Positions 23,743-45,967 of a DNA stretch of 64,000 nt are shown piece after piece. Position numbers and translations under genes: made by a program. The notes under the pieces were generated by a model. It saw nothing but the letters and a program-made list of their open reading frames with translations, was not told the DNA's origin and searched no databases. The stretch covers positions 124,001 through 188,000 of IMG/VR virus record IMGVR_UViG_3300043418_000072, one strand, 5' to 3'. Numbering within the stretch: position 1 is the first letter of the stretch; the number at the start of each line of letters is the position of its first letter.

Positions 23743-24282
23743 TTACATACGTCTATTAATAGCGTCCCAGTCCATAATTCGCCAAATGCTGTCCAGGTAT
23801 TTTGCTTTGTTTGTGCTGTAGTCGTTGGTGTAGGCATGTTCCCACATATCAACTAACAGTGCAATGTCTGTGCGTTTAGTGTGATTACGTATAGTTTTAA
23901 TTGCGCCGCTCTTGCTTAGATAAATCCAGCCAGAGCCTTGCATCTTTAATGCTTCTTCTTTGAAGTTCTTTTTAAAATCCACAAATGATGTGTGGTGACG
24001 ATTGATTAGATCTAAGATATGCCCTTTAGGTGCAATAGAACGCGGGGCTCTGAACTGACTAAAGAATATACCATGTAGATAGGCCCCTGCTTCGTTGAAG
24101 CTTTTGTCGCCCTCGCCTTTGTTGTATCGATCTACGTAACCCTTGTATAGTTTCCCGTAATGTGTGTCAATAGTGGCGCTGCTCATAACTGGTGAGAGTG
24201 CAGTGTGACTGTAGGGCAGTTTGATCTGCTCTAATTCGGTTGGCGATTCTAATAGAGTTAAGGTATTACGGATGGAGTGCAT
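23743..24282 (-). CDS. sod: Fe/Mn superoxide dismutase
   Basis: LPYSHTAL, TH, YLHG, GSGW, DMWEHAY; ATAAATA at 24287-24293. Confidence 0.9.
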   Translation of the reverse strand: MHSIRNTLTLLESPTELEQIKLPYSHTALSPVMSSATIDTHYGKLYKGYVDRYNKGEGDKSFNEAGAYLHGIFFSQFRAPRSIAPKGHILDLINRHHTSFVDFKKNFKEEALKMQGSGWIYLSKSGAIKTIRNHTKRTDIALLVDMWEHAYTNDYSTNKAKYLDSIWRIMDWDAINRRM

Positions 24283-24285: not shown

Positions 24286-24507
24286 TTATTTATTGCGATA
24301 CACTACACGCCCACGATCCATGTCATATGGGCTCATTTCAATTTCTACGCTGTCGCCGAGCAAGATGCGAATATTGTTTTTGCGTAGTCTACCGCCAATG
24401 GTTGCGGTAATGGTATGCTTGTTTTCAAGCACAATTCTAAACATAGCGTTGGGTAGAACTTCTTCTACTTTACCGGCCATGCGAATAATGTCGTCTGATT
24501 TTGCCAT
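24286..24507 (-). CDS. infA: Translation initiation factor IF-1
   Basis: [32 protein letters not shown]. Confidence 0.95.
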
Positions 24508-26499: not shown

Positions 26500-26773
26500 G
26501 TTGTTTACTCAGTATATCAAAAAGTGTGCCAATTTTAAAAACTGCTATATTGTCGGCAGGCTCCTCTACATCGAGTGCAGAGTGGAATTCTATTAGTGTG
26601 CGCATTGCAATCTGCCCAAATGAAATGCCAAACAGTTCAACCCATCTAGTTTTCATTAAGGACTTTGTTCCGTCAAATGTTGCATAGTAGCAATCATCAA
26701 TGATGTCGATACTAACTTTAACCCCGAGAGGTTTTAGTTTAGCTTTGCATTTATCAACAAATTCAAAATCCAT
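26483..26773 (-). CDS. Hypothetical protein
   Basis: TAATG-coupled; ends in TAG. Confidence 0.65.
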   Translation of the reverse strand: MDFEFVDKCKAKLKPLGVKVSIDIIDDCYYATFDGTKSLMKTRWVELFGISFGQIAMRTLIEFHSALDVEEPADNIAVFKIGTLFDILSKQHEQTL

Positions 26774-27039
26774 TAGGACCACTTTAGTGTAAACATCATT
26801 GCATCTTGCTCTCGCTTGAATGCAAAGTAACTGCCGACATTACGCCACTCGCTACTTTTGAGATTCTCGTAGCACCAGCGCTCTTGTTTATCTGTGGTCT
26901 CGGCTTTGACGTGGTACGGCCAATACTTCTTGTTTAGTACTCTCATGCGATGTTCCTCATCAATTTGGGCCCAAAATGCTCTGCTTCGTGGGCCTTCAAA
27001 ACAGCTTGGGTACATGCTGCTGATATCATTATCGATCAC
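26773..27039 (-). CDS. W-cassette; N-terminal PolB motif A-like peptide
   Basis: Ends FKREQDAMMFTLKWS; GTGA-coupled. Confidence 0.8.
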   Translation of the reverse strand: MIDNDISSMYPSCFEGPRSRAFWAQIDEEHRMRVLNKKYWPYHVKAETTDKQERWCYENLKSSEWRNVGSYFAFKREQDAMMFTLKWS

Positions 27040-27251
27040 GCCCATTTTAGTAGAAATGCAGTTATCTCTGCCCGTGTTTTAAACTTAAACGTGTCAAAGC
27101 TCGTGCGGCGCCCGTAGCCAACCTGATCACACCATTTTTGAACGGGATCCATGTCCTCTTCACGCAGGAAAGATTCGTAGCCCCGCGGAGCAACGGGCAT
27201 CGTTGCACGAAGCTGCTTACCCTCGCGTAGCCATTTGATCTTCTTTTCCAT
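27036..27251 (-). CDS. W-cassette
   Basis: Ends AFLLKWA. Confidence 0.8.
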   Translation of the reverse strand: MEKKIKWLREGKQLRATMPVAPRGYESFLREEDMDPVQKWCDQVGYGRRTSFDTFKFKTRAEITAFLLKWA

Positions 27252-27256
27252 GCTGT

Positions 27257-27285
27257 ATTATAGCATAACACCCAATTTAGGTCAA
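27257..27285 (-). promoter_or_regulatory. sigma70-type promoter inside array
   Basis: TTGACC-17-TATAAT; -35 overlaps a TGA stop. Confidence 0.8.
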
Positions 27286-27494
27286 CTCCAACGTAAGCAG
27301 AATAAAGTTAATACTTTTTCATTGGGTACTACCACTGTCATTCCTTGCACTTGGGAATCGGTTTCTTTACACCAGTCTGCCAAGTCTTGGTAGTGTGCGC
27401 TCCAGTACATAATGTCTGACAGAACAATTAGGTGGCCACCATTAAACCATGCGTCCGTTTGCTCAGACTGTGTTGGTAGTACGTAGCGTGAAAT
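27282..27494 (-). CDS. W-cassette (not in track; start uncertain)
   Basis: ...LADWCKETD...TLFCLRWS; no ATG/GTG/TTG at expected start. Confidence 0.6.
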   Translation of the reverse strand: MSRYVLPTQSEQTDAWFNGGHLIVLSDIMYWSAHYQDLADWCKETDSQVQGMTVVVPNEKVLTLFCLRWS

Positions 27495-27495
27495 A

Positions 27496-27894
27496 TTAGC
27501 CCCACTTCAGCACGAATGCTGTCCTATCTTCGGCTCGTTTAAAGCAATAACGGTAGTTAATTTTATCCCATATAAATTCAGGATGCTCGTTGGAGCAGCG
27601 TGGTCCGAATGTTTCTTCACACCATGCATCAACTTGTTCGTAATGCGCCTGGGTTCCTTTGATGTTCCAGAATGCTCCTGCAGACAGGGGCAATCGTGCC
27701 CAATACCATTCCACGATGTTGTTTTCGGTTGCATGACTAGCGGCTTCATCCACGTAAGTCTCCCCGGTTTCGAGTTCGATTCCCATATCCATATGCTGCA
27801 CACCAATGATGTCAGTTGCGATCATTGTGGGCATGACCTTACGGATCATTGGGATCAAGATTTTCATTTGATCGTTGATATTCTTATCAGTCAT
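27496..27894 (-). CDS. W-cassette; N-terminal major-capsid Gol-like peptide
   Basis: DAWCEETFGP, ends AFVLKWG. Confidence 0.8.
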   Translation of the reverse strand: MTDKNINDQMKILIPMIRKVMPTMIATDIIGVQHMDMGIELETGETYVDEAASHATENNIVEWYWARLPLSAGAFWNIKGTQAHYEQVDAWCEETFGPRCSNEHPEFIWDKINYRYCFKRAEDRTAFVLKWG

Positions 27895-28078
27895 TTTGCG
27901 TCCATTTCAATTCATACATAATGTAAACATCTTCATTCATCCAGAGATTATCCAGTCCGTAATTGTAGACTGTACCCCACCGGTCGCCTTCGGGCCCAAA
28001 GTTTTGCTCAAGCCAATGCCATATAGTGGCCTTACGTGGATGCCCCCAATGTTCAATAGCTAGGCCGTATTGCTTCAT
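27887..28078 (-). CDS. W-cassette
   Basis: WLEQNFGP, MYELKW. Confidence 0.75.
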   Translation of the reverse strand: MKQYGLAIEHWGHPRKATIWHWLEQNFGPEGDRWGTVYNYGLDNLWMNEDVYIMYELKWTQND

Positions 28079-28365
28079 AGCCATTTCAACTTGATAAACG
28101 CCAGCAGGTCTTCACGCACAATGTAGATAGCACGGTGCCTGCCGCCGTATATTCTCCAGCGTTCTTTTCCGCCGTTTTCTTCAATCCAGTCACCAAACCA
28201 ATAGCTACAGTTTAACCGACTCCACACATGGCCGTCGTCTTCTTTAAACCCGTACTCGCAGCCTGGCTCAACATAATACAGTCTATCGCCGTGTACCATA
28301 TCATGTTTTGGGTCATGCTTGGACCGAATCCACTCTTGTGAATTAGATCTAGGTCTTTCCATCAT
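28075..28365 (-). CDS. W-cassette
   Basis: Ends FIKLKWL. Confidence 0.75.
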   Translation of the reverse strand: MMERPRSNSQEWIRSKHDPKHDMVHGDRLYYVEPGCEYGFKEDDGHVWSRLNCSYWFGDWIEENGGKERWRIYGGRHRAIYIVREDLLAFIKLKWL

Positions 28366-28574
28366 GCCCACCTCAGTGCAAACATTGCAGCATCTTGTTC
28401 TCGTGCAAAGTAGTATATACGATTTTCAGGGTTAACAAAATCCACTCCGTAATAATCGTAGTCCATATTTAAAATATTGTCCAGCAACCATATACGCAGG
28501 TCTCTAAACTGTCCAGTACTGCGCCATGGTACAGTGACTCGAATTGTACACCAATATTTCTCATGCCGACTCAT
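28362..28574 (-). CDS. W-cassette
   Basis: Ends EQDAAMFALRWA. Confidence 0.8.
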   Translation of the reverse strand: MSRHEKYWCTIRVTVPWRSTGQFRDLRIWLLDNILNMDYDYYGVDFVNPENRIYYFAREQDAAMFALRWA

Positions 28575-28591
28575 GACCACCTCAGTACAAA
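28571..28591 (-). repeat. LRWS junction repeat (minus strand TT[GC/TA]..[T/C]TGAGGTGGTCATGA)
   Basis: 12-mer TCATGACCACCT exact at 28571, 28807, 29324, 44853, 45737, 45964, 46212, 46433; many near copies. Confidence 0.95.
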
Positions 28592-28810
28592 CCATTCAGC
28601 GTCTTTTTTATCACGGAAATCAAACCATTCAATATCAAATGTACCGTCAATGGTTTCACTGCCCATGAACCCTGGGTGATCCTTGCCATAAGTCCAGCGT
28701 TTAAGATTGCCATTATGTACTTCCGGTGGCCCAAAGTTCTTGGTCATCCAATACCACATTTCAGACATTTCTAAAATCGTTCGCTGAGTATTCTTAGTAT
28801 AAACTTTCAT
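28571..28810 (-). CDS. W-cassette
   Basis: WMTKNFGP, ends WFVLRWS. Confidence 0.8.
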   Translation of the reverse strand: MKVYTKNTQRTILEMSEMWYWMTKNFGPPEVHNGNLKRWTYGKDHPGFMGSETIDGTFDIEWFDFRDKKDAEWFVLRWS

Positions 28811-29052
28811 GACCACCTTAATACAAACCAAGCAAACTTCTTTTCATCAATGACATTGTACCCAACTATCTTGTTATGGTACCCTGACAACAGTATCTCT
28901 ACACCGCACACAGTTTCTAGAAAATGCAAGTAAGCATCTTCTTTGATTTGGCCAGTGACGACCTTTGCTTCTGGCGGCAATATGATAGGCTTTTTAAGAA
29001 ATTCGTTATTAGCCTGTCTGACTACAATCTTTTTTACAAGGTCTAAATCCAT
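28807..29052 (-). CDS. W-cassette
   Basis: Ends WFVLRWS. Confidence 0.8.
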   Translation of the reverse strand: MDLDLVKKIVVRQANNEFLKKPIILPPEAKVVTGQIKEDAYLHFLETVCGVEILLSGYHNKIVGYNVIDEKKFAWFVLRWS

Positions 29053-29327
29053 TAACTCCACCTTAGTACAAACAACGCATACTCTTGCTCACATAAGAAC
29101 TTGAACGTATACCTGCCAGTGTATCTCCATTGGTCACCGGCAACGAGTTCTTCTTCACGCTCGGCACTTATAAGTTTGCACCCGCGTTCTCGCAACCATC
29201 TGTATGCTTTGACATATACACTATAGCTAGGCACAGTGTGATACAACCAGTTATTACAAGATGCACCCTCGCATCTATGCTCGTGGCGACAAATATCATC
29301 CCACTCTAACTTAACGGTATCTGTCAT
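29052..29327 (-). CDS. W-cassette
   Basis: Ends LFVLRWS. Confidence 0.8.
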   Translation of the reverse strand: MTDTVKLEWDDICRHEHRCEGASCNNWLYHTVPSYSVYVKAYRWLRERGCKLISAEREEELVAGDQWRYTGRYTFKFLCEQEYALFVLRWS

Positions 29328-29662
29328 GACCACCTCAACACAAACAGAGTTAAGTCTTCCTTACTTGTAAACCAGAACTCGCGTCCAAATATTTGATATT
29401 GCGCTGTAGTGTTCAGGTGTATCCATTTCACAACCTCTGCTATTTGGTGGTTGCCTGGTGTAGCAAACTTGTCGCTAGTAAACGGTGCCTTGACCCATCC
29501 TTCTAACATAAGTCTTTGCCTTTTGATAGTGTTGACAATTTCGTCATCGATCTCTTTTTGCAATGCTGCTCCAACCTCTTGCCATACTTCGTCGTCCTCT
29601 GGCTTCTCAATGGTCCATTTGACTTTGATGGCACGAGTCTTTGCTGCAATAGTTTGTTTCAT
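29324..29662 (-). CDS. W-cassette; N-terminal major-capsid-like segment
   Basis: IAAKTRAIKVKWTIE; ends LFVLRWS. Confidence 0.8.
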   Translation of the reverse strand: MKQTIAAKTRAIKVKWTIEKPEDDEVWQEVGAALQKEIDDEIVNTIKRQRLMLEGWVKAPFTSDKFATPGNHQIAEVVKWIHLNTTAQYQIFGREFWFTSKEDLTLFVLRWS

Positions 29663-30078
29663 GACCATTTTAGTAACAGCATTGAATACAGTTCTTCGTG
29701 TATATTGTAGTTGTTGAACGTGGGGTGACCAAATCGCAGTGCGCCTGTGTTGTAGTGACGGCACCACATATCGGGGTCTTGCTCTTGCACCCACCCGCTA
29801 ATAGTTGAAGGACGACAATGCACAGTGTACCATGTAGCACCAGCTAGAGCAAACGTATCTAACTTCTGGATTTGCTCCTTAATACCCATCTCGTAGTATC
29901 TGCTCTTTAGCATTTGGTAAGTCATTGTGGACTTGCCAGTTTGTCTACCTCCGGCAAAAATCATCATTTCATCAGGATGTATTCCACCTGAGATGTTTTG
30001 AAAAACAGATGAAGACCCGCGCGGCATTACTGCTTCCATTGTTTCAATATCCAGTACTACGGTGTTGCGTTTTGTCAT
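29659..30078 (-). CDS. W-cassette; N-terminal helicase Walker A-like segment
   Basis: IFAGGRQTGKST; ends MLLLKWS. Confidence 0.8.
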   Translation of the reverse strand: MTKRNTVVLDIETMEAVMPRGSSSVFQNISGGIHPDEMMIFAGGRQTGKSTMTYQMLKSRYYEMGIKEQIQKLDTFALAGATWYTVHCRPSTISGWVQEQDPDMWCRHYNTGALRFGHPTFNNYNIHEELYSMLLLKWS

Positions 30079-30278
30079 AGCCATCTCATTATAAAAAGCA
30101 TCTTATGTTCTTCCTTAGAGAACATAAACATACTGTCAAGATATTCCCAATTCTGCCCGTAGTGCTCACGTAGCCAGTTACTAATTTGATACCAAGTACC
30201 GCCGGGAGTATACCAATCTCCTGTACGCTTAAAGCGCACATGGTACGGATATAGTTCTCTTGTAGTTTTGGTTCTCAT
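30075..30278 (-). CDS. W-cassette
   Basis: WLREHYG, ends LFIMRWL. Confidence 0.8.
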   Translation of the reverse strand: MRTKTTRELYPYHVRFKRTGDWYTPGGTWYQISNWLREHYGQNWEYLDSMFMFSKEEHKMLFIMRWL

Positions 30279-30637
30279 TGGGCCCACATCAATGCTGCTA
30301 TTGTAGCATACTTTGTCTTTCCTACCCGAAACTTAATATCCAGAGTATCTATTTCATCTGTCCAAAATCCAAAAGTTCCCATTCTCCATTCCCAATCAAT
30401 GCCCTGACGCCCAACATGCTCTTCTAACCATGGGCGATAGTGATCGTTTGGATCAGCGGAGTCGACGATTACCTCTTCGCCATCAGGATCACAACCCAGA
30501 GAAATTGGGCCATTGGGCCAAATGACCCCAATGCTAGTGCCAGGCACAATGGTCCAGTAAAACCATTCTTTCCATTCTATAAACTTACCAAATTTTACCC
30601 AATCGCATAGCCTGTTCCAGAGATTCCGATCATCCAT
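30275..30637 (-). CDS. W-cassette with N-terminal extension
   Basis: WLEEHVG, ends AALMWAQ. Confidence 0.7.
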   Translation of the reverse strand: MDDRNLWNRLCDWVKFGKFIEWKEWFYWTIVPGTSIGVIWPNGPISLGCDPDGEEVIVDSADPNDHYRPWLEEHVGRQGIDWEWRMGTFGFWTDEIDTLDIKFRVGKTKYATIAALMWAQ

Positions 30638-30638
30638 A

Positions 30639-30869
30639 TTATTTCCATTTCAATGCAAAGAAGGTTGCATCTTTGCGATGTTTAAAGTAGAAAAATGTTG
30701 TGCCAAACGCACTAGCCATGCACCATGTGCCTAACCCTTCCCACTCAACTGGCTTGGACCAAACGTGGTTGCTATAACGAGGATTAGACCCAATATTGTG
30801 CTCGCACCATTCTTCCATTTCACCCTGTAAGTGATAACGATCTTTACCAAATTCAACAGTAGTTGTCAT
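30639..30869 (-). CDS. W-cassette
   Basis: WCEHNIG, ends FFALKWK. Confidence 0.8.
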   Translation of the reverse strand: MTTTVEFGKDRYHLQGEMEEWCEHNIGSNPRYSNHVWSKPVEWEGLGTWCMASAFGTTFFYFKHRKDATFFALKWK

Positions 30870-31099
30870 GACCATCTCAACATAAAAATTGTTCTATCCG
30901 ATTCATTAATAAAGCCCCAATGCTGTTCAGCCCTGTCGCTCCAGCTACCCTGTTTGTTTAACAGCACGGTGCGATATTCCTGTATCATCCAAAGGTAATA
31001 AGGAGTTTCGTAATGATTTACGTTCATCATGTAGTACTCACGTGATTTAGCGTAGTAGGGATCTCGTTCGCAGTAAAATTGGACTAGGTCTGTTTTCAT
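30866..31099 (-). CDS. W-cassette
   Basis: Ends IFMLRWS. Confidence 0.8.
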   Translation of the reverse strand: MKTDLVQFYCERDPYYAKSREYYMMNVNHYETPYYLWMIQEYRTVLLNKQGSWSDRAEQHWGFINESDRTIFMLRWS

Positions 31100-31356
31100 G
31101 ACCATCTCAGCAAAAACGCTACCCTATCTTCATCATTACGAAACCAAAACTTTGCATTGTTAGCATACCAACGAGCACCGGGTTCCCATACACCCATTTC
31201 TGCACTGGCACCAAAGGTTTCTACACACCATGCTAACATATTGCGCCAATTGGTATTTGTGTCATTTAAGCTACTAGGAATCCACCAATCAAAGTCTGGT
31301 CTAACCGTGTAGTAGCGAGCTCCGTGTATGCGCCCTTCTAACAATTCAAACTTCAT
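31096..31356 (-). CDS. W-cassette
   Basis: WCVETFG, ends AFLLRWS. Confidence 0.8.
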   Translation of the reverse strand: MKFELLEGRIHGARYYTVRPDFDWWIPSSLNDTNTNWRNMLAWCVETFGASAEMGVWEPGARWYANNAKFWFRNDEDRVAFLLRWS

Positions 31357-31576
31357 TGCTTGCTTTCAGTGCAAACCAAGTTATGATTTCGTTATTCAGG
31401 CAATCGTGTCGAATCCATACACCATCGGGCGCACTAAACCATTCGCGGTCCACAAGCGGCATCGTGATACGGTTGTCACTAATGTGCAGGCGGCACAGGT
31501 CAATTTCCTCACTGCCCCATATAAAGTCCTTGGGAACGTGTTTGAATTTAAAAAATCGGTGAGTCTCGCTATACAT
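31346..31576 (-). CDS. W-cassette, variant tail
   Basis: WFALKA. Confidence 0.7.
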   Translation of the reverse strand: MYSETHRFFKFKHVPKDFIWGSEEIDLCRLHISDNRITMPLVDREWFSAPDGVWIRHDCLNNEIITWFALKASNEV

Positions 31577-31833
31577 TACTTTGCCCACTTTAGTGCGAAT
31601 AGCACTGCTTCTTCATCACATTCAAACTCAATGAACTTTTCACGAAGATACCCGGGACTGTGGTAGTAAGGATGGCGTGTGTTTGCTTTAAGCCATTCAT
31701 TGACTATATAATCCTTGTAGCTGATTTGCCATTGTGCTGGGACACCATCAATGGTGTGTGCATAGACAACACGGTGCAACACGGGAAAATTAACACCTGG
31801 GAATAACGGATTAGTTTTATAAGTTACTGCCAT
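31576..31833 (-). CDS. W-cassette
   Basis: Ends IEFECDEEAVLFALKWAK. Confidence 0.8.
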   Translation of the reverse strand: MAVTYKTNPLFPGVNFPVLHRVVYAHTIDGVPAQWQISYKDYIVNEWLKANTRHPYYHSPGYLREKFIEFECDEEAVLFALKWAK

Positions 31834-32051
31834 AACAATCCAAACAGTGTTGCATCTTCATCCCGATAAAAACGAATCGCCCATCGTTCGTCGCCATATC
31901 TGCCGGGCCCTTTGTTAACAATAGCAACACGGACGATGCAGGAACGTTCTTGAGGAAAGTGTGCGTCAAGCCACTTTTGTAGAGTTTCCATAGAGAACGT
32001 GCGACTGCCATTCATTAAGGTTGGGTATGGAATTTCAAGCAACTGCTGCAC
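31824..32051 (-). CDS. W-cassette
   Basis: Ends DEDATLFGLLWQ. Confidence 0.8.
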   Translation of the reverse strand: MQQLLEIPYPTLMNGSRTFSMETLQKWLDAHFPQERSCIVRVAIVNKGPGRYGDERWAIRFYRDEDATLFGLLWQ

Positions 32052-32391
32052 CTTGCCTTAAATAGTACCAAGCCAAGCGACTTTCTAATAAGTCATAAAA
32101 TGCTCTAGCTTCGTGTTTGTGAAAAAACACAACTCCCCCAACCACATACATGTCTTCCCATCCGTATGTCATATCAGACCGTTGAAAATAATTTTTTTCG
32201 CTAATCCACAGTGTTTCTAGTTCGCCATTGTTTAGCGTAATGCCCAGGCCAACTTCACGGCATCCAATGTCTCGGAACAGAAGATCAACTAACTTGTCTC
32301 GCTGTCTAGCATTATGTGCAAAGTTATTCTCAGCCCATGTCACTAACCAAGTGTTGTTAGGAAGATCTGTGAGTTTAAAAGGATTAGACAT
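32035..32391 (-). CDS. Hypothetical protein within array
   Basis: No clear W tail. Confidence 0.7.
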   Translation of the reverse strand: MSNPFKLTDLPNNTWLVTWAENNFAHNARQRDKLVDLLFRDIGCREVGLGITLNNGELETLWISEKNYFQRSDMTYGWEDMYVVGGVVFFHKHEARAFYDLLESRLAWYYLRQGAAVA

Positions 32392-32392
32392 G

Positions 32393-32674
32393 CTATGCCC
32401 ATTTCAAACTAAACATTAACAGATCGCTTTCGCGGCGGAATACAAAGATCAAATCTGAGATATCTTCAAGATTGTCATCGTTGTCGTAGTACTCTTCTTC
32501 CTCTTCGTCGCTGCCTGGAACTAGTACTTCTTCATAGCAGTACCAATCTTCGGCGCCCAGCCATGTATTGTTTGCATGTCGCTTGCTACCAGGGCCAACG
32601 TTAGCGTTGAGCCATGCTTCGATTTGATCTAATTGATCGTGATGCTTGTGTGCTAGTTTAAGTTTATAACTCAT
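32393..32674 (-). CDS. W-cassette with acidic insert
   Basis: WLNANVGP, ends MFSLKWA-TAG. Confidence 0.8.
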   Translation of the reverse strand: MSYKLKLAHKHHDQLDQIEAWLNANVGPGSKRHANNTWLGAEDWYCYEEVLVPGSDEEEEEYYDNDDNLEDISDLIFVFRRESDLLMFSLKWA

Positions 32675-32940
32675 GTGAATTTCATTACTAAAAATGTATA
32701 GGCTTTTGTAGCTTCTTCTAAGTTACGGTATTTCCAGTGTGTGCCAGCTTGCCCGCTGCGGCAGCGAGTTGGGTCAATCACATCGCGAACTTGCTCGGGG
32801 AAACTTTTCTCCCCTGCAGGTCGTTCTCGGTCCATCCAGTAATCATATGTCATCTCGACACGATAATGCACCTTGTCGCTTTTGCGATGGCGCCATTTGA
32901 TTAATCGGAAATTCTCGCCGCGGTGGATAATATTGTCCAT
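32671..32940 (-). CDS. W-cassette, variant tail
   Basis: EEATKAYTFLVMKF. Confidence 0.6.
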   Translation of the reverse strand: MDNIIHRGENFRLIKWRHRKSDKVHYRVEMTYDYWMDRERPAGEKSFPEQVRDVIDPTRCRSGQAGTHWKYRNLEEATKAYTFLVMKFT

Positions 32941-32941
32941 A

Positions 32942-33418
32942 TCATTCAGTTCCCAAAATATTCCACATACCCAATTGCTCTTTGAGATGTCTATTCTCTG
33001 CTTGTACCTTGTCAATTACTTCGTGAGCTTTTTCAGCTTCTCTAACTGCGTAAAGGTGATTGGATTTTGCAGAGTCAATTGCCCGCTGCGCATCTACTAG
33101 AAGTTCTGTAACGGTGCGTCGACTTAACTTATCAAGTTCTTCACGAGCATCCGCTAAATCCATTTCGGCTACCGCACGGTCATCTTCTGCGTAGGCAACC
33201 ATCTTTTGCAAGTGGGTGATGTAATCTCCGGGGTAGTAGTCTTGGTGATCGTCTGTAAAGACCCATGTGTTAGGATCCATGCCTGCTTCGACTAAATCAC
33301 CAACAAGCCCACCGTTAGGTGCAGACAGCATGTTGATTAATCGTTTGACCAATGGATCAGTGCTAGTCAAATCCAAGTAGCGTAGCAGCTCTACGTCAGA
33401 TAGATGATTTAGATTCAT
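32942..33418 (-). CDS. Coiled-coil hypothetical protein
   Basis: Heptad-like C-terminal half. Confidence 0.7.
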   Translation of the reverse strand: MNLNHLSDVELLRYLDLTSTDPLVKRLINMLSAPNGGLVGDLVEAGMDPNTWVFTDDHQDYYPGDYITHLQKMVAYAEDDRAVAEMDLADAREELDKLSRRTVTELLVDAQRAIDSAKSNHLYAVREAEKAHEVIDKVQAENRHLKEQLGMWNILGTE

Positions 33419-33725
33419 GTTTTAAAATCTCGAATAGTGTTGCATATTCAACCCAGGGTTCCATGTGAAAGCCTTTGCCCCACACTGCCCAGAATCGTTG
33501 TTTGTAAACAGTGCGTAACCAAATGCGATTACCACCTATTGTTTTAACTGGCCAAAGTGCAAACGTCTTGCGCCATGGGTAGCAGTCAGGCCCGTTGTAA
33601 ATTCGTTCAGTTATGTCCAACTCCACAGTCTCCGATCCTATTAGCAATGGCGCAATGCCTGTTGGGTTCTTGTCCCACTTAAGGCGATGTTCTCCGATTC
33701 GGCCATTTTTAAGACGAACTTTCAT
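33396..33725 (-). CDS. Hypothetical protein
   Basis: WRKTFALWPVKT. Confidence 0.65.
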   Translation of the reverse strand: MKVRLKNGRIGEHRLKWDKNPTGIAPLLIGSETVELDITERIYNGPDCYPWRKTFALWPVKTIGGNRIWLRTVYKQRFWAVWGKGFHMEPWVEYATLFEILKHESKSSI

Positions 33726-34006
33726 TAATACGAATGTGTTACCGACTCAGTATAGATTTGTTGTAGTAGATGGATTCTACCTGCGTACCGTAATTGTAAC
33801 ATACATTCACCTTTATCGTCAAATGTGGTTAGTTTTATAACCCCGGGCGAGCTGCGGTAGTGATAGACCTGCCCGCTGGTTTCAATACGCTGATGCTCAC
33901 CTTGCTGGGCGTCTAGTTGTATGCCATTGTTTTTGCAGTAGTCTACATCAGACTGGTCGGGGATAACATTGTGATCCAACACCCAAATTCTTACTATAGT
34001 TAACAT
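33725..34006 (-). CDS. W-cassette-like variant
   Basis: MLQLRY; similar to 48754..49047. Confidence 0.6.
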   Translation of the reverse strand: MLTIVRIWVLDHNVIPDQSDVDYCKNNGIQLDAQQGEHQRIETSGQVYHYRSSPGVIKLTTFDDKGECMLQLRYAGRIHLLQQIYTESVTHSY

Positions 34007-34263
34007 ACACTATCCGCAAAACTCAGAGCAAACATAATAGCAGCTTGTTCCCATTCAAATTGAAATGTAGTGTATTCACTATCCCAAGTTTTTGTGCCTC
34101 CACGCCAATCAATGTAGTAGCGTTTGAAATAGCCCTTATCGCCTGTTGGATAGTCGTCGCACCACTTCATCATAGCATTGACTTCAGGCGAGTTCTTTTT
34201 AATACGCACCTTATATCTAAAGTCGGGGTACTGATTCCCGCCACCGCCGTAAAATAATTCCAT
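34000..34263 (-). CDS. W-cassette
   Basis: KWCDDY, FEWEQAAIMFALSF. Confidence 0.75.
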   Translation of the reverse strand: MELFYGGGGNQYPDFRYKVRIKKNSPEVNAMMKWCDDYPTGDKGYFKRYYIDWRGGTKTWDSEYTTFQFEWEQAAIMFALSFADSVC

Positions 34264-34481
34264 TAGCTCCACCTCAACACAAACATTGTAGCATCTTCTT
34301 CCCTGCGAAATTTAATCCATCCACCATGGCTATCCCAAGTGCCATTACCTAATGCTAGTCCCGGGTGACCGAATGTGGTCCAGCACCATCCGTATATTTC
34401 GCTCATCTCTGGACCTTGTGGACTGTAGTACATTTCCCACTCGTAGTATCGGTCCGGGCGATGTTTGAATTTAATATTCAT
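34263..34481 (-). CDS. W-cassette
   Basis: WCWTTFG, ends EEDATMFVLRWS. Confidence 0.8.
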   Translation of the reverse strand: MNIKFKHRPDRYYEWEMYYSPQGPEMSEIYGWCWTTFGHPGLALGNGTWDSHGGWIKFRREEDATMFVLRWS

Positions 34482-34897
34482 TACACACTCCAGTATAGAC
34501 TAAACATTACAGCATCTTGCTCATTGTTAAATGCAAAAAATAGAATGTTGTGGCTTAGACCCATGCACCCTTGCGTCCATTCGCCATCCCAACTCTTGTC
34601 AACTGGGAGGATATCTTCTCTCCATTTACCGGTGGCATTTGCTGCGCACCACGTGGTCATGTTATCAACTACGGTGATCCATCCTTGGCCATGCCGCCGT
34701 TCCAGTGGCACTGTGTCGTCAAACGGGACGAGGTAAGGGTAGCCACGATACACGTCCTTACGAATACTACCACCACGTGCGCAAAAATCAGGATCATTTA
34801 TGAGATCAAACTGGCGCTGAGTCCATCCCTTCTTCTTAAGGTAACGGGCATGTCGCCATGCTTGAAACCTACCTACCGTAGCGTGTAGTAACTTCAT
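34481..34897 (-). CDS. W-cassette with N-terminal extension
   Basis: Ends EQDAVMFSLYWSV. Confidence 0.75.
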   Translation of the reverse strand: MKLLHATVGRFQAWRHARYLKKKGWTQRQFDLINDPDFCARGGSIRKDVYRGYPYLVPFDDTVPLERRHGQGWITVVDNMTTWCAANATGKWREDILPVDKSWDGEWTQGCMGLSHNILFFAFNNEQDAVMFSLYWSV

Positions 34898-35084
34898 CTA
34901 GTGTTTTCTTTGCTATTTTTCCTGACGGATGATCTGGGTGCATACGTGCGATATCATCTAGTGCAGTCCACATCAACTCGTGTTCGTGTTGTTGCTGGTA
35001 TACCTTATCCCGCAAGCGACTGGCATCCATAATGCTTAGGACACCAGCAATTAACTTGGGAAGGATACGAGCAAGGAATTCCAA
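34869..35084 (-). CDS. Hypothetical protein
   Basis: Start uncertain; ends in TAG. Confidence 0.55.
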   Translation of the reverse strand: MEFLARILPKLIAGVLSIMDASRLRDKVYQQQHEHELMWTALDDIARMHPDHPSGKIAKKTLDEVTTRYGR

Positions 35085-35312
35085 TTATAAGTACTTCAAT
35101 CTAAACATTGTTTCTGCTGCGTCATTGAAGAAGTCTAAGTAGACAGTAGTGATGTAACCTGTTTGTTCTCGGTAAACCTGATGATGGCGGTCGGTGAATC
35201 CTAACTCACGCTTCATTACAGATCGCAAGAGCCAAACACTAGGCTTGTCTGCGTACTCAATTTTAATCTGAGCTCGGATCTTGCGCCACTCAGTATCGGT
35301 TAGTGTGATCAT
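35085..35312 (-). CDS. W-cassette
   Basis: Ends TMFRLKYL. Confidence 0.75.
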   Translation of the reverse strand: MITLTDTEWRKIRAQIKIEYADKPSVWLLRSVMKRELGFTDRHHQVYREQTGYITTVYLDFFNDAAETMFRLKYL

Positions 35313-35541
35313 ACTTTAACTTGAAAAAGGTTGCATCCTCATCTTTAAGTTTAGCAGTTACTCTGTAACGAAGAGAGTATGAGTGGTAATCGTTGCACTT
35401 GCTCCATTGCGGGGTTTCAATTGCATTAGCCATAACCCATTTCCCTGCATCACTTTGCTGCCATTCCCATAGAGGCCATGCGGCATAAAGGTCCGGGTCA
35501 TCAACATCCCCCACTGAAAATTCATGAACAGCTAGAGTCAC
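35290..35541 (-). CDS. W-cassette
   Basis: DEDATFFKLKY. Confidence 0.75.
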   Translation of the reverse strand: MTLAVHEFSVGDVDDPDLYAAWPLWEWQQSDAGKWVMANAIETPQWSKCNDYHSYSLRYRVTAKLKDEDATFFKLKYDHTNRY

Positions 35542-35720
35542 CGCCATTTTAATGCAAATAGTGTAGCATCAGAGGGACTAGAGAAATCAAACCTATACGT
35601 GGGATTGTTACCCAGCATACTGTTTAAGTCTATTGTCCATCCCTTAATACCAAATTGTTGTCTGCACCAGCCGCCCGCCTCAAGCGCCTTATCGGCACCA
35701 TTAATTGTGATAGAGTTCAT
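35538..35720 (-). CDS. W-cassette (first of array 1)
   Basis: WCRQQFG, ends LFALKWR. Confidence 0.8.
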   Translation of the reverse strand: MNSITINGADKALEAGGWCRQQFGIKGWTIDLNSMLGNNPTYRFDFSSPSDATLFALKWR

Positions 35721-35726
35721 AGTACT

Positions 35727-35755
35727 ATTATACACTAAATGCCTTTATGCGTCAA
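35727..35755 (-). promoter_or_regulatory. sigma70-type promoter heading W-array 1
   Basis: TTGACG-17-TATAAT. Confidence 0.8.
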
Positions 35756-43990: not shown

Positions 43991-44170
43991 CTAACTCCAT
44001 TTTAAAACAAACATCATTTCATCCTCGGGCGTGTCAAACTCAACCATAAAGTACAAGTAATCGTCTTTACGGTAGCTGTCATGAAAATGCCCATTGGGAA
44101 TATCACTGAGCCCGCTTTCAATCATGCGTTGCTGAATGTTGACCCAGTCAATCATACGGTACGTTAACAT
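43991..44170 (-). CDS. W-cassette (59 aa, not in track)
   Basis: ...VEFDTPEDEMMFVLKWS-TAG. Confidence 0.75.
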   Translation of the reverse strand: MLTYRMIDWVNIQQRMIESGLSDIPNGHFHDSYRKDDYLYFMVEFDTPEDEMMFVLKWS

Positions 44171-44171
44171 G

Positions 44172-44462
44172 TCATGCCCACTTTAGTAAGAACCAAGCAT
44201 ACTTTTGCTCGTCGAGCACTGTGGTGATAACCCTCTGTCCACTATTGTGATAGCGATACTCAAACCCATGCACATGTTTACACCATTCCCCAAAACCAAA
44301 GTCTGTGACTGTATCTTTAATCTCAGGCCACTGGCTCCATGCGTTTTGAATTGCAGTTAGTGCTTGATCCTTTGGTGCCATTATTTCCTTACAGAGGTTT
44401 GTGCCGTAGACGCTGTTTAGTTGCATCTTGCGATGCAATTTTGCCCATTCTTCTTTAGTCAT
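44172..44462 (-). CDS. W-cassette; N-terminal PolB motif B-like peptide
   Basis: RKMQLNSVYG; ends WFLLKWA. Confidence 0.8.
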   Translation of the reverse strand: MTKEEWAKLHRKMQLNSVYGTNLCKEIMAPKDQALTAIQNAWSQWPEIKDTVTDFGFGEWCKHVHGFEYRYHNSGQRVITTVLDEQKYAWFLLKWA

Positions 44463-44665
44463 GCAAACCTCAATGCAAACATGGTAGCATATTTTTCATC
44501 AGAAAAATACCAGTCAGACCATTCACCTTCACCGGTTTCCCACACATAAAACCACTCACCTCCATACTCGCCAATATTTTTTTCGCACCACTTAACTCTA
44601 GCCTCAGTGCGTTCATGGTGCCATCCATAGAGTCTGACTTCGGTCATTGGTTCACTTAATGTCAT
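44459..44665 (-). CDS. W-cassette
   Basis: WCEKNIG, ends MFALRFA. Confidence 0.8.
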   Translation of the reverse strand: MTLSEPMTEVRLYGWHHERTEARVKWCEKNIGEYGGEWFYVWETGEGEWSDWYFSDEKYATMFALRFA

Positions 44666-44856
44666 AGCCACCTCAATGCAAACAGTGTAGCATCTTCTTC
44701 TTTATGAAACCAAAATGTTCGGATAGTGTCCCATGCCCGACGCTTGCCATTAGGTTCCGGTGGTCCAAAGTTATCCAAGCACCACTTCCACGCGACCTGT
44801 GTACCACTTTCCCCGTATACATCACGAAGTTTCTTGCTGATTTTAATTTCAATCAT
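44662..44856 (-). CDS. W-cassette
   Basis: WCLDNFGP, ends LFALRWL. Confidence 0.8.
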   Translation of the reverse strand: MIEIKISKKLRDVYGESGTQVAWKWCLDNFGPPEPNGKRRAWDTIRTFWFHKEEDATLFALRWL

Positions 44857-45101
44857 GACCACCTCAACATAAACCAAGAGTACAATTCTTCGTCTTCAAA
44901 CTCGATCCAGTGCAGAACACTACTTTCAAATAAGTTGCCCACCTCTTCCATGTAGTACACTGCACGGTACTCAACCAGTGCTGCATTAACATAAGCGTCG
45001 GTTACTGCCTGTGGTCCCACTTGTTCTTGCAGGTGTGCAACAAATTTGTTCCACACAGGGATAGGTGCATAGTCTTTAACAAGATCCAATCGTATCATCA
45101 A
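44853..45101 (-). CDS. W-cassette
   Basis: Ends WFMLRWS. Confidence 0.8.
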   Translation of the reverse strand: MMIRLDLVKDYAPIPVWNKFVAHLQEQVGPQAVTDAYVNAALVEYRAVYYMEEVGNLFESSVLHWIEFEDEELYSWFMLRWS

Positions 45102-45265
45102 AACCTCAGCGCAAACTCTGTGGCTTTTAACGGGTCACGAAAACGAAAGTCCCAGCCACAGCCATCAGAACTGCACACCCAATCATTATAGTCGAGATTG
45201 GCATGGCACCATTCTGCCCCGCTGGTGTAATCATCAATTGTTACTATTGCCCATTTCGCCATCAT
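45098..45265 (-). CDS. W-cassette
   Basis: Ends EFALRF. Confidence 0.75.
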   Translation of the reverse strand: MMAKWAIVTIDDYTSGAEWCHANLDYNDWVCSSDGCGWDFRFRDPLKATEFALRF

Positions 45266-45543
45266 AAGTGCCTTAATGTAAACATAATTAGATTTTCTTC
45301 TTCGAAGAAGTCTGCATAACGCTTGCTGTATTCTGTATAAATGCGGCCACCACATGACCAAACATAATGATCAAACGCTTGACCAGCACCATAACGTAAG
45401 TTAAGTCGATCAAAGTGGTCAATCCAATGTCCCGAGGTCTTATACCCATTGTTTGCAGCCCACTTCTGGAAGATAGTGTTTAGCTGGTCGGATTCAATAC
45501 GTGCCTTTTTCATAAGGGAGTCTCTTGTATATTGCTTTTTCAT
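45262..45543 (-). CDS. W-cassette
   Basis: Ends MFTLRHL. Confidence 0.75.
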   Translation of the reverse strand: MKKQYTRDSLMKKARIESDQLNTIFQKWAANNGYKTSGHWIDHFDRLNLRYGAGQAFDHYVWSCGGRIYTEYSKRYADFFEEENLIMFTLRHL

Positions 45544-45740
45544 TTATGGATCAATGCAAACATTATAGCATCTTTTTCATTTTCGAAGTAAACGCCATGT
45601 CCTCCCATGCTAAAATGTCCGATTCCATCAAACTCTTCGCACCAAAGCAATGCCTCTATCCAACCAATGGTTTTTTGGTTTTCAGATAATGGAATGTATG
45701 TGTAGTCGCAATCCATTAGCATAGTTAGCTCTTGCTTCAT
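45540..45740 (-). CDS. W-cassette
   Basis: FENEKDAIMFAL. Confidence 0.75.
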   Translation of the reverse strand: MKQELTMLMDCDYTYIPLSENQKTIGWIEALLWCEEFDGIGHFSMGGHGVYFENEKDAIMFALIHK

Positions 45741-45967
45741 GACCACCTCAACATAAACATTGTCATGTGTTGTTCGTCAGGAAACGATACCCACAACTCG
45801 GGTTTGCGACCAACTGGTCCAACCTTAACAACATTGTAGTCTTGCTTGAGCCAATCCCAAATAGTTATGTGATGCCCGTCGTTGTTGTGTATGTCACGAC
45901 CAATGTTGTCCCAGTAGTAATTGGCAATCTTCTGAAAGTATGGGCGAATGTCTTTGCGTAGTTTCAT
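45737..45967 (-). CDS. W-cassette
   Basis: Ends MFMLRWS; close to 46433. Confidence 0.8.
   Translation of the reverse strand: MKLRKDIRPYFQKIANYYWDNIGRDIHNNDGHHITIWDWLKQDYNVVKVGPVGRKPELWVSFPDEQHMTMFMLRWS

What the first reader, a model, noticed from the sequence alone, without database searches (positions are those of the whole stretch)
29908..30060. Helicase Walker A fragment, possibly with an ExoI-like DIET motif, fused to a W domain
Seen: FQNISGGIHPDEMMIFAGGRQTGKSTM, preceded by VVLDIET. Known: DnaB/gp41-type helicases have GG...G[DE]L.I.A....GK[ST], and DEDD exonucleases start with D-I-E-T. No Walker B follows. The DIET match is weak.
Basis: partly seen in the sequence, partly recalled or inferred. 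Interest (0 to 1): 0.65.

Follow-up and report, generated by a model that had tools for sequence, protein, structure and literature searches.

The report
Orphan helicase-type P-loop on small phage protein
A 141-residue jumbo-phage protein carries only the first ATP-binding motif of a replicative helicase, joined to a small phage-specific domain; it cannot be a helicase, but it belongs to a large, conserved and undescribed family of mini P-loop proteins.

Summary
Window 29659..30084 (minus strand) encodes a 141-aa protein (P0001) with VVLDIET and GGIHPDEMMIFAGGRQTGKST at the stated coordinates. The gene is under purifying selection (dN/dS 0.17-0.30).

P0001 belongs to a subfamily of at least 272 metagenomic phage protein clusters, 97-141 aa long. 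In 120 representatives the P-loop is nearly invariant (K51 in 117/118, G50 in 116/118).

The N-terminal module best matches the H1/Walker A region of DnaB/gp41-type helicases:
- The phage's own gp41 is the only clear hit in its proteome (E 8.6e-6; next is TerL at 0.21).
- PHROG DnaB-like helicase is hit by 34 of 64 members, all weakly.

Only about 45 residues of the roughly 255-residue ATPase domain are present, so this is not a helicase. 'DIET' is not an exonuclease motif. It is the subfamily's version of the helicase 'LD..GG' segment, here split by a 17-aa insertion.

The C-terminal half is a divergent member of the 'W' family, which has 45 paralogs in this window. Two sister genes carry true fragments of the major capsid protein gp23.

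Function is unknown. My best guess is a non-motor, phosphate- or nucleotide-binding accessory protein. A decoy or mimic role is not excluded.

The parts
29659..30084 (-). CDS of P0001 (141 aa; stop at 29659-29661). The start ATG overlaps the upstream gene's stop (ATGGCTATGA). An alternative start is Met3, as called in some orthologs.
   Evidence: Orthologs. dN/dS.
30040..30060 (-). Residues 9-15, VVLDIET. This is the subfamily's 'hDIE(T/A/S)' element, which aligns with the helicase 'LD' segment upstream of H1. It is not an ExoI motif.
   Evidence: D12, I13, E14 and T15 are invariant in the five close orthologs. 18 of 120 subfamily members have hDhE just before GG. No exonuclease family is hit.
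29989..30039 (-). Residues 16-32, MEAVMPRGSSSVFQNIS. This insertion is specific to the P0001 lineage and is absent from all other subfamily members. It weakly resembles the NrdA motif 'MP.ETS.QISNATNGIEP'.
   Evidence: Alignments. NrdA resemblance: phrog_84 E 7e-4. The Smith-Waterman (local alignment) score against the phage's own NrdA is at null level.
29926..29988 (-). Residues 33-53, GGIHPDEMMIFAGGRQTGKST. This is the H1-type strand plus P-loop module. The Walker A octet G45-S52 (GGRQTGKS) lies at 29929..29952.
29881..29925 (-). Residues 54-68, the helix after the P-loop (MTYQMLKSRYYEMGI). It is 9 residues longer than in the short-form homologs.
   Evidence: alignment A6. The low-confidence AF2 model predicts a helix at 56-66.
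29662..29880 (-). Residues 69-141, a W-like C-terminal domain: hairpin 'QKLDTFALAGATWYTVHCRP', helix 'WVQEQDPDMWCRH', and the family's signature C-terminal helix 'HEELYSMLLLKWS'.
   Evidence: blastp to array member 27887..28084 gives E 0.002. hhalign to the W family aligns only the last 13 columns, probability 28%. Leave-one-out HMM scores 6.4 bits. W85 and W98 are invariant in 120 homologs.
29324..29668 (-). Downstream, translationally coupled sister gene (114 aa from MVMKQ...). Its N-terminus is a gp23 fragment (strand plus spine helix; T4 gp23 residues 256-301), followed by a W domain.
   Evidence: Pfam Gp23 E 0.004 and 7e-4. The G001 ortholog scores 25.5 bits, above the cut-off. Alignments to G001 gp23 (score 90) and to T4 gp23.
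27496..27894 (-). Sister gene (132 aa). Its N-terminus 'KILIPMIRKVMPTMIATDIIGVQHM' copies the Gol region of gp23 (T4 residues 98-119), followed by a W domain.
   Evidence: Pfam Gp23 27.6 bits against a cut-off of 24.4. Also. 15/25 identity to the gp23 of relative G001.
26773..35735 (-). First block of the tandem array of W-family small genes, about 28 members including P0001.
43991..48258 (-). Second block of the W-family array, about 17 members.

Best explanation
P0001 is a genuine, selected small accessory protein of a roughly 354-kb jumbo phage that is distantly related to T4. It has two parts:
- An N-terminal module of about 45-65 aa that reproduces only the first motif block of a DnaB/gp41-type replicative helicase: 'LD/DIE..GG..GE-hhh-AGRQTGKS', meaning strand, P-loop and the start of a helix.
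- A small C-terminal domain that is a divergent member of the phage's hugely expanded 'W' family.

It has no Walker B, arginine finger, DNA-binding loops or N-terminal helicase domain. It therefore cannot hydrolyse ATP as a ring motor or unwind DNA.

The P-loop residues G, K, S/T and the preceding R and T are almost invariant across more than 100 homolog clusters. For that reason the most likely working part is the P-loop itself. I infer that the protein binds a phosphate-bearing ligand (a nucleotide, or a nucleic-acid backbone) without motor activity, and acts as a regulator or sequestering factor in host takeover or replication.

Shown: the anatomy, the conservation, the helicase-type resemblance and the family context.
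Inferred: origin by capture of a helicase gene fragment onto a W scaffold (by analogy with the sister genes that carry gp23 fragments), and ligand binding.

The confidence of 0.55 is for the whole statement. The anatomy and the 'not a helicase' part are about 0.9. Helicase-type origin is about 0.65. Ligand binding as the mechanism is about 0.4.
For: - Real gene: ORF; orthologs at 72-90% identity; conserved synteny; dN/dS 0.17-0.30.
- Large subfamily: 12 metagenome loci at 36-44% identity and 272 clusters at E<=1e-3.
- P-loop conservation in 120 representatives: G34 116/117, G38 107, E/Q39 114, R47 107/118, G50 116/118, K51 117/118, S/T52 117/118.
- Helicase-type match:
  - Subfamily N-terminal profile against the phage's own large ORFs gives gp41 163-190 at E 8.6e-6, with the next hit at 0.21. 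A narrower profile gives E 3.5e-4.
  - 11/20 identity of P0001 33-52 to gp41 169-188.
  - phrog_19 is hit by 34/64 members at the Walker A positions, by 4/5 close orthologs and by 5/7 distant ones.
  - The only P-loop hits in the PDB are DnaB-like phage helicases, residues 174-205.
  - ESM Atlas feature neighbours are all RecA-fold fragments; this is a lead only.
- Not a helicase: DnaB_C covers only profile positions 10-44 of 255, scoring 11.5 bits against a cut-off of 27. The phage has an intact gp41.
- Fragment capture has precedent in the same array: two sister genes carry gp23 fragments, as do W proteins of unrelated metagenomic phages.
Against: - No ligand-binding or structural evidence.
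- Every single-sequence family match is below curated thresholds.
- The Walker A octet has Arg at position 3 and is identical over 7 residues (RQTGKST) to the phage's large terminase, not to gp41. TerL PHROGs are hit by 8+3 of 64 members. The donor is therefore not settled.
- Profiles of the close orthologs also match FlaH/KaiC and ABC nucleotide-binding domains at a similar weak level.
- One ortholog (P0005) has Glu in place of the Walker lysine.
- There is no DNA-level trace of a recent copy from gp41 or terL (32/60 and 17/21 nt identity).
Confidence: 0.55

Rival explanations
1. Motif-mimic or decoy. The W scaffold displays a copy of a highly conserved helicase segment, as sister genes display gp23 segments. 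The copy would compete for, or pre-empt, a factor that recognises the real protein. That factor could be a host pattern-recognition immune sensor, or a partner of the helicase such as a loader or primase. The P-loop would be conserved for likeness, not for ligand binding.
For: - Sister genes carry the gp23 Gol region and the gp23 spine-helix region.
- Gol-like N-termini recur in unrelated W proteins (P0088, P0134).
- The Gol region binds EF-Tu and is the most conserved part of gp23 (PMC3014915).
- Bacterial Avs sensors recognise the major capsid protein (with EF-Tu), DNA polymerase, and the RecA-type ATPase domain of helicases and RecA (bioRxiv 10.64898/2026.01.04.697583).
- The array lies behind sigma-70-like promoters, which hints at early expression. 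The promoter count is not above shuffles.
Against: - Reported sensors recognise folded domains by shape. A 45-aa piece from the buried core of a RecA fold is a poor mimic.
- The most conserved residues are exactly the phosphate-binding ones, which fits ligand binding better.
- A catalogue of 268 anti-defence proteins, searched for 'decoy' and 'mimic', showed DNA mimics and no decoy built from a phage's own protein.
- There is no binding evidence of any kind.
Confidence: 0.15
2. The module derives from, or mimics, the large terminase (gp17-type) Walker A rather than a helicase.
For: - The 7-mer RQTGKST is identical to the phage's TerL residues 82-88.
- Arg at Walker A position 3 is typical of large terminases (my own knowledge of T4 gp17 'SRQLGKT' and 'GGRGSGKS' terminases; not tested here).
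- 43 of 120 members have 'YQxxL' upstream, like the TerL 'YQ' adenine-binding motif. Own TerL has 'FEYQKRLIEN'.
- phrog_2 is hit by 8 members and phrog_5989 by 3 of 64 (best E 5.5e-4).
Against: - In the own-proteome profile search TerL scores E 0.21 against 8.6e-6 for gp41.
- The conserved 'LhDK..GGFKxGEL' segment aligns with gp41 'LDRLLYGGFSRGEL', not with TerL.
- DnaB-type PHROGs are hit by 34+14 members, against 11 for TerL.
Confidence: 0.1
3. Chance or convergent P-loop. The N-terminal segment is an independently evolved anion-binding loop, or a plain strand-turn, and has no historical link to any ATPase.
For: - All family matches are sub-threshold and short.
- Several ATPase superfamilies match about equally at the single-sequence level.
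- Bare P-loop patterns occur by chance in this genome.
Against: - The match extends about 28 residues beyond the octet.
- It is specific to one protein of the phage's roughly 12 P-loop proteins.
- The same family and the same profile positions recur over 34 divergent members.
Confidence: 0.1
4. A decaying remnant of a second helicase gene (pseudogene fragment), accidentally in frame with a W gene.
For: Only one motif of the helicase is present.
Against: - Purifying selection acts on both halves.
- The architecture is conserved in at least 272 clusters.
- The P-loop is nearly invariant.
- No helicase-like sequence flanks the gene.
Confidence: 0.02
5. A DEDD-type exonuclease ExoI motif (DIET) marks a nuclease function.
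For: D12-I-E14-T15 are invariant in the close orthologs.
Against: - No exonuclease family is hit.
- There is no ExoII or ExoIII motif, and no room for the fold.
- The element is absent from 56 short-form homologs. In the others it abuts GGFKxGEL as part of the helicase-like block.
Confidence: 0.01

Closest known systems
DnaB/gp41-type replicative helicases (Pfam DnaB_C PF03796; phrog_19; T4-type gp41 structures 8dtp, 8due, 8g0z)
   Same: It shares the H1 block: 'LD..GG(F)..GEL-hhh-AG....GKS', with a hydrophobic strand running into the P-loop and a helix after it. The phage's own gp41 is the best match.
   Different: Only about 45 of roughly 255 residues of the ATPase domain are present. There is no H1a, H2 (Walker B), H3 or H4, no arginine finger, and no N-terminal domain. 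Arg sits at Walker A position 3, whereas gp41 has Ser there. The protein is 100-141 aa against 481 aa.
Large terminase (gp17-type) Walker A
   Same: The RQTGKST heptad is identical to the phage's TerL. Many subfamily members have an upstream YQxxL.
   Different: There is no terminase fold and no nuclease domain. The profile match to TerL is much weaker than to gp41.
Engineered minimal beta-(P-loop)-alpha polypeptides (laboratory 'P-loop prototypes'; from my own knowledge, not checked here)
   Same: A strand, Walker A loop and helix without the rest of an NTPase domain. Such constructs are reported to bind nucleotides and nucleic acids.
   Different: P0001 and its relatives are natural, conserved phage proteins with the module grafted onto an unrelated small domain. 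No binding was measured here.
The array's 'W' family of small phage proteins (not in Pfam or PHROGs)
   Same: Same tandem array, the same overlapping ATGA junctions, and the same C-terminal helix 'hE..Y..hLLKWS'. Sister members also have N-terminal modules copied from a core protein (gp23).
   Different: The rest of P0001's C-terminal half is divergent. Leave-one-out HMM gives 6.4 bits and hhalign aligns only 13 columns. Its hairpin region looks more like GW/SH3b modules in a PDB profile search (E 0.002).
T4 Gol peptide of gp23 (the Gol/Lit/EF-Tu exclusion system)
   Same: This concerns the sister gene 27496..27894, not P0001. Its N-terminus aligns to T4 gp23 residues 98-119. I place these inside the Gol region from my own recollection of its coordinates (about 93-122), which I did not verify; the paper I read says only that Gol is a 29-residue stretch in the first quarter of gp23.
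   Different: Here the peptide is a separate small gene fused to a W domain. Nothing is known about EF-Tu binding.

Membership tests
DnaB/gp41-type replicative helicase | Complete RecA-like ATPase domain (DnaB_C, about 255 positions) scoring above the curated threshold | tested here: not met
   DnaB_C scores 11.5 bits against a cut-off of 27 and covers only profile positions 10-44. A genome-wide family search finds only the true gp41.
DnaB/gp41-type replicative helicase | H1 / Walker A block with the preceding 'LD..GG..GEL' strand | tested here: met
   Own gp41 163-190 against the subfamily profile gives E 8.6e-6. phrog_19 Walker A positions are hit by 34/64 members.
DnaB/gp41-type replicative helicase | Walker B (H2), H3, H4 with arginine finger, DNA-binding loops, and the N-terminal primase-interacting domain | tested here: not met
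   After the P-loop only about 88 residues remain, and they form the W-like domain. No profile match extends beyond the Walker A region.
P-loop NTPase (general) | Walker A, GxxxxGK[ST], conserved among homologs | tested here: met
   GGRQTGKS. G50 in 116/118, K51 in 117/118, S/T52 in 117/118.
P-loop NTPase (general) | Walker B: a hydrophobic strand ending in Asp/Glu, positioned next to the P-loop strand | tested here: inconclusive
   A conserved 'I..LD' follows (D76 in 93/120). By comparison with other W proteins it belongs to the C-terminal domain's hairpin. No usable structure is available.
P-loop NTPase (general) | Nucleotide binding or hydrolysis | not testable with these tools
   Needs biochemistry.
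DEDD 3'-5' exonuclease | ExoI (DxE) together with ExoII and ExoIII motifs in a fold of about 150 aa | tested here: not met
   Only D12-x-E14 is present. No exonuclease family is hit. The element is part of the helicase-like block.
'W' small-protein family of this phage clade | C-terminal helix motif F.F..E.D...F.L[KR]W[SA] at the very C-terminus | tested here: met
   HEELYSMLLLKWS. hhalign E 6e-4 over 13 columns. Motif listing.
'W' small-protein family of this phage clade | Whole-domain similarity (beta-beta-alpha-beta-beta-alpha, about 75 aa) to the family profile | tested here: inconclusive
   A leave-one-out HMM gives 6.4 bits for P0001 and up to 13.4 bits for short-form homologs. hhalign probability is 28%. 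blastp to one array member gives E 0.002.
'W' small-protein family of this phage clade | Position inside the tandem array with overlapping start/stop junctions | tested here: met
   24 of 42 junctions are ATGA overlaps, including both junctions of P0001.
Large terminase ATPase | Terminase N-terminal ATPase domain (Walker A, Walker B, C-motif) plus nuclease domain | tested here: not met
   Only the RQTGKST heptad is shared. TerL E is 0.21 in the own-proteome profile search.
Class I ribonucleotide reductase large subunit | Barrel domain. A fragment would need a match above chance to the phage's own NrdA. | tested here: not met
   Pfam E 0.16 and phrog_84 E 7e-4. The Smith-Waterman score against the phage's own NrdA is 47, at the null level of 46.5 +/- 4.1. 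The matching residues lie in an insertion that all other subfamily members lack.

The most novel reading that the evidence does not exclude
In this phage clade the W scaffold may be a display platform. Its members would carry, at the N-terminus, copies of the most conserved motifs of the phage's own essential proteins: the gp23 Gol region, the gp23 spine helix, and the helicase H1 block. These would serve as trigger-mimic decoys that blunt host pattern-recognition immunity or other factors that read those motifs. P0001 would be the helicase/RecA-fold decoy.
Probability: 0.12. Interest if true: 0.9.

Novelty: new variant of a known kind. Interest (0 to 1): 0.6.

Why it matters
If the P-loop is functional, this is a natural and widespread family (at least 272 clusters) of roughly 100-aa proteins. 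They carry a Walker A motif without any of the usual NTPase machinery. That bears on how little protein is needed for phosphate or nucleotide binding, and on how phages recycle pieces of their core genes.

Together with the sister genes that carry gp23 fragments, it points to recurrent grafting of conserved core-protein motifs onto one small scaffold. That scaffold family has expanded to more than 40 copies per genome and more than 3,100 cluster representatives. Neither the W family nor the P-loop subfamily is in Pfam or PHROGs, and I found no description of either in my limited literature searches.

For annotation, the practical message is that this ORF must not be called a helicase.

Tried and rejected
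- **Known-phage searches.** megablast of the region and tblastn of P0001 and of the gp23-fragment protein against 50,697 phage records gave no match. tblastn of residues 1-68 at E<=10 returned only insignificant hits to RNR, DnaB, UvsX/RecA and unrelated proteins.
- **AF2 of P0001 with 5 orthologs.** pLDDT 43, unusable, so no fold search was made with it.
- **Recent DNA copy from gp41 or terL.** Rejected: 32/60 and 17/21 nt identity, with synonymous sites differing.
- **NrdA-fragment reading.** A collinear 21/61 alignment to a Listeria phage NrdA exists. It is not significant in the database (E 6). It is at null level against the phage's own NrdA. It lies in a lineage-specific insertion.
- **gp23 as the source of P0001's N-terminus.** Null-level scores.
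- **'The W domain itself derives from gp23'.** Rejected: the W HMM does not hit T4 gp23.
- **gp43 motif A look-alike in 26773..27045** (GVIDNDISSMYPS against own gp43 GAIDINSLYPS). Not significant.
- **Fold searches with the W-domain model** (pLDDT 82). No PDB match by Foldseek (best E 0.5). VIA-align best Z is 5.2 (DCoH, ACT and BMC-like sandwiches), which is uninformative. BFVD and the Atlas return only uncharacterised phage proteins.
- **Complex prediction of E. coli EF-Tu with the Gol-fragment protein.** No verdict; this is evidence neither for nor against binding.
- **The genome search on locus L006.** The same contig was reached through L013.
- **Circularly permuted mini-ATPase** ('VVLDIE' as a Walker B ahead of the Walker A, suggested by an alignment to the phage's MoxR-like AAA+ protein). 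Dropped, because the short-form homologs lack that segment.
Full report
**What is at the coordinates.**

The finding's span, 29908..30060, lies on the minus strand inside an ORF at window 29659..30084. The ORF translates to a 141-aa protein, P0001. VVLDIET is residues 9-15, and FQNISGGIHPDEMMIFAGGRQTGKSTM is residues 28-54.

The window is bases 124001-188000 of a 354,098-bp IMG/VR virus record. The phage's large terminase is 53% identical to that of the Pseudomonas jumbo phage PA5oct and 50% to that of Sinorhizobium phage Phosso. The genome also encodes a gp41-type helicase, UvsX, NrdA, a family-B DNA polymerase and gp23. It is therefore a distant T4-superfamily jumbo phage.

**Is it a real gene?**

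Yes.
- Four full-length orthologs at 72-90% identity exist in metagenomes.
- A 320-kb relative (G001) has the same gene in the same order.
- Nei-Gojobori dN/dS against two orthologs is 0.17-0.30 overall and 0.24-0.35 for residues 3-66.
- The start overlaps the upstream stop (ATGGCTATGA), and the stop overlaps the next start (TGGTCATGA). 24 of 42 genes in the array use such ATGA overlaps.

**The gene's surroundings.**

P0001 sits in a minus-strand tandem array of about 45 small genes, in two blocks (26.8-35.7 kb and 44.0-48.3 kb). Almost all of them end in F.F..E.D...F.L[KR]W[SA].

A typical member folds confidently (AF2 pLDDT 82, pTM 0.73) as beta-beta-alpha-beta-beta-alpha. It has no informative solved relative: the best Foldseek E is 0.5 and the best VIA-align Z is 5.2. 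It matches only uncharacterised phage proteins in BFVD and the ESM Atlas.

Scanning all 45 members turned up no Pfam or PHROG family for the W domain itself. Relatives carry 41-43 copies. An exhaustive profile search finds 3,104 cluster representatives at E<=1e-3.

**Sister genes carry capsid-protein fragments.**

Of the 45 members, only three hit known families, and they are the three with long N-terminal extensions.
- **Window 27496..27894.** It matches Pfam Gp23 above the curated cut-off (27.6 against 24.4 bits, profile positions 5-32). It aligns to T4 gp23 residues 98-119. It has 15/25 identities to the gp23 of relative G001. By my recollection the Gol peptide spans about residues 93-122 of T4 gp23; I did not verify those coordinates. 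The review I read says only that Gol is a 29-residue stretch in the first quarter of gp23, that it binds EF-Tu, and that it is the most conserved part of gp23 (PMC3014915).
- **Window 29324..29668.** This gene is immediately downstream of P0001. It matches Gp23 profile positions 124-193 (E 7e-4 to 0.004). The G001 ortholog scores 25.5 bits, above the cut-off. It aligns to T4 gp23 residues 256-301.
- **P0001** is the third.

Gol-like N-termini also occur on W proteins from unrelated metagenomic phages (P0088 and P0134: Gp23 E 3e-4 and 9e-4). Grafting of core-protein motifs onto this scaffold is therefore a recurrent and real phenomenon.

**What the N-terminal module of P0001 is.**

Single-sequence scans gave only weak and conflicting hits. 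They included AAA_14, VapE, DnaB_C (11.5 bits against a cut-off of 27), the RNR barrel, and the UvsX, DnaB and RNR PHROGs. A profile of the five orthologs hit FlaH/KaiC-like proteins (E 0.011) and ABC nucleotide-binding domains.

The picture cleared when more distant homologs were found:
- 12 metagenome loci at 36-44% identity.
- Then 272 clusters with a profile search.

These proteins are 97-141 aa long and share a nearly invariant block:

| Position | Conservation |
|---|---|
| G34 | 116/117 |
| [WF]35, [KR]36 | conserved classes |
| G38 | 107 |
| [EQ]39 | 114 |
| next four positions (40-43) | mainly hydrophobic |
| A/S45, G46 | conserved classes |
| R47 | 107/118 |
| T49 | 94 |
| G50 | 116/118 |
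| K51 | 117/118 |
| S/T52 | 117/118 |

Upstream of the block there are three variants:
- none (56 of 120 members);
- 'YQxxLhDK..' (43 members);
- 'hYDIE(T/A/S)..' directly before GGFKxGEL (18 members), for example MNAIYDIETDGGFKHGEL.

P0001 belongs to the third group. It has a lineage-specific 17-aa insertion (MEAVMPRGSSSVFQNIS) between DIET and GG.

Three results link this block to DnaB/gp41-type helicases:
- A profile of the module, searched against the phage's own 273 large ORFs, hits the gp41-type helicase at 163-190 (LDRLLYGGFSRGELNIFAGGSGSGKSLV) with E 8.6e-6. The next hit is TerL at 0.21, and the phage's other P-loop proteins are not hit (narrower profile).
- Among 64 members scanned against PHROGs, the DnaB-like helicase family is hit by 34, always at its Walker A positions. 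A primase/helicase family is hit by 14, and terminase families by 8 and 3.
- In the PDB, the only P-loop proteins found are DnaB-like phage helicases, at residues 174-205 (E 0.35).

I conclude that the module is a helicase-type H1 block. 'DIET' is its 'LD' segment, not an exonuclease motif.

One caveat remains. The octet GGRQTGKS has Arg at position 3 and shares RQTGKST with the phage's terminase. A terminase contribution cannot be excluded.

**What it is not.**

- **A helicase.** Only about 45 of roughly 255 domain positions exist. What follows is a short helix and the C-terminal small domain. The phage has an intact gp41.
- **A recent DNA copy** of gp41 or terL.
- **A DEDD exonuclease.**
- **An NrdA fragment.** That resemblance lies in the lineage-specific insertion and is at null level against the phage's own NrdA.

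**The C-terminal half.**

It shares the W family's terminal helix (HEELYSMLLLKWS), its array position and its junction style. It also matches one array member by blastp (E 0.002).

However, a leave-one-out W profile gives it only 6.4 bits, and hhalign aligns only the last 13 columns (probability 28%). I therefore treat it as a divergent W-like domain.

A PDB profile search of the subfamily puts its 'IRILDQA.VDGETWYTV..VSGWV' region nearest to the GW (SH3b-like) modules of internalin B (E 0.002). I did not follow this up.

**How it most likely works.**

Shown: a conserved mini-protein with an orphan helicase-type Walker A block on a small domain.

Inferred: the best-conserved residues are precisely the phosphate-binding ones (G, K, S/T, plus R and T). 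The simplest mechanism is therefore binding of a phosphate-bearing ligand without motor activity. The protein would act as a small nucleotide- or nucleic-acid-binding regulator or sponge.

The single K51E ortholog (P0005; one contig) is an outlier among 118 sequences.

The main rival is mimicry or decoy. It is suggested by the gp23-fragment sisters and by recent work showing that bacterial Avs sensors read the capsid protein (with EF-Tu), DNA polymerase and RecA-type ATPase domains. That paper describes recognition of folded domains, which a 45-aa core fragment would not mimic well. A catalogue of 268 anti-defence proteins, searched for 'decoy' and 'mimic', showed no decoy built from a phage's own protein.

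**Limits.**

- There is no usable structure of P0001.
- There is no expression data. Promoter-like sites upstream (35755 to 35727 and 27285 to 27257, each 11/12 matches) are no more numerous than in shuffles.
- All homologs are unnamed metagenomic proteins.
- The reads tools were not used.

**Verdict.**

The helicase Walker A reading is right as a resemblance and probable origin, but wrong if taken as 'a helicase'. The ExoI reading is wrong.

The object is a member of an undescribed, widespread family of mini P-loop phage proteins. It is embedded in a remarkable array whose members also carry capsid-protein fragments.

Noticed in passing
window 26773..35735 and 43991..48258 (minus strand): Two blocks hold about 45 tandem small genes of one family, ending F.L[KR]W[SA]. 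24 of 42 gene junctions are ATGA start/stop overlaps, and 13 share the sequence [AG]TGGTCATGA. Relatives carry 41-43 copies, and 3,104 cluster representatives exist in metagenomes. The family is absent from Pfam and PHROGs. AF2 gives a beta-beta-alpha-beta-beta-alpha fold with no informative PDB relative.
   Followed up: partly
window 27496..27894 (minus): A 132-aa W-family protein whose N-terminus copies a conserved gp23 segment (T4 residues 98-119). It scores above Pfam's Gp23 cut-off. That this segment is the EF-Tu-binding Gol region rests on my recollection of the Gol coordinates. A predicted complex with E. coli EF-Tu gave no verdict.
   Followed up: partly
window 29324..29668 (minus): A 114-aa W-family protein, translationally coupled to P0001. 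Its N-terminus copies the gp23 strand plus spine-helix region (T4 residues 256-301): 'KQTIAAKTRAIKVKWTIE'.
   Followed up: partly
proteins P0088, P0134, P0073, P0054 (metagenomic W-family members): Unrelated W proteins also start with gp23-like segments. P0088 and P0134 hit Pfam Gp23 (E 3e-4 and 9e-4). P0073 ('VIENTRKSLES') and P0054 resemble the gp23 N-terminal region and spine helix by eye only. Other long members (P0031, P0032, P0034, P0086, P0167) are tandem double W domains.
   Followed up: partly
window 26773..27045 (minus): This W-family protein begins MGVIDNDISSMYPS, which looks like motif A of the phage's own family-B DNA polymerase (GAIDINSLYPS). It is not significant in Pfam or in a shuffle-controlled Smith-Waterman test.
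   Followed up: yes
G000:C1:353941-354096 (outside the window; end of the record): The record's own gp23 gene is cut by the end of the linear record. Only profile positions 304-354 are present, although the record is rated 100% complete. The relative G001 has the full 391-aa gp23.
   Followed up: partly
window 24286..24507 and 23743..24282 (minus): By synteny with the annotated relative (L006), these encode an IF-1/eIF-1A-like protein (PF01176, 73 aa) and an Fe/Mn superoxide dismutase C-terminal domain protein (PF02777). Both are unusual phage cargo. The window's own copies were not scanned.
   Followed up: no
L001:393-812 (protein P0005): This one ortholog has Glu instead of the Walker A lysine (GGRQTGEST). 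It is known from a single 1.8-kb contig, against 117 of 118 homologs with Lys. It could be a sequencing variant or a degenerate copy.
   Followed up: partly
window 29662..29880 (minus) and subfamily alignment A7: In a PDB profile search, the subfamily's 'IRILDQA.VDGETWYTV..VSGWV' region is closest to the GW (SH3b-like) cell-wall-binding modules of Listeria internalin B (E 0.002) and Lmo1076 (E 0.015).
   Followed up: no
window 35727..35755 and 27257..27285 (minus): Two near-consensus sigma-70-like promoters (11 of 12 matches, one with an extended TG) lie upstream of parts of the array. This hints at early transcription, but the total number of sites in the region does not exceed shuffles.
   Followed up: no
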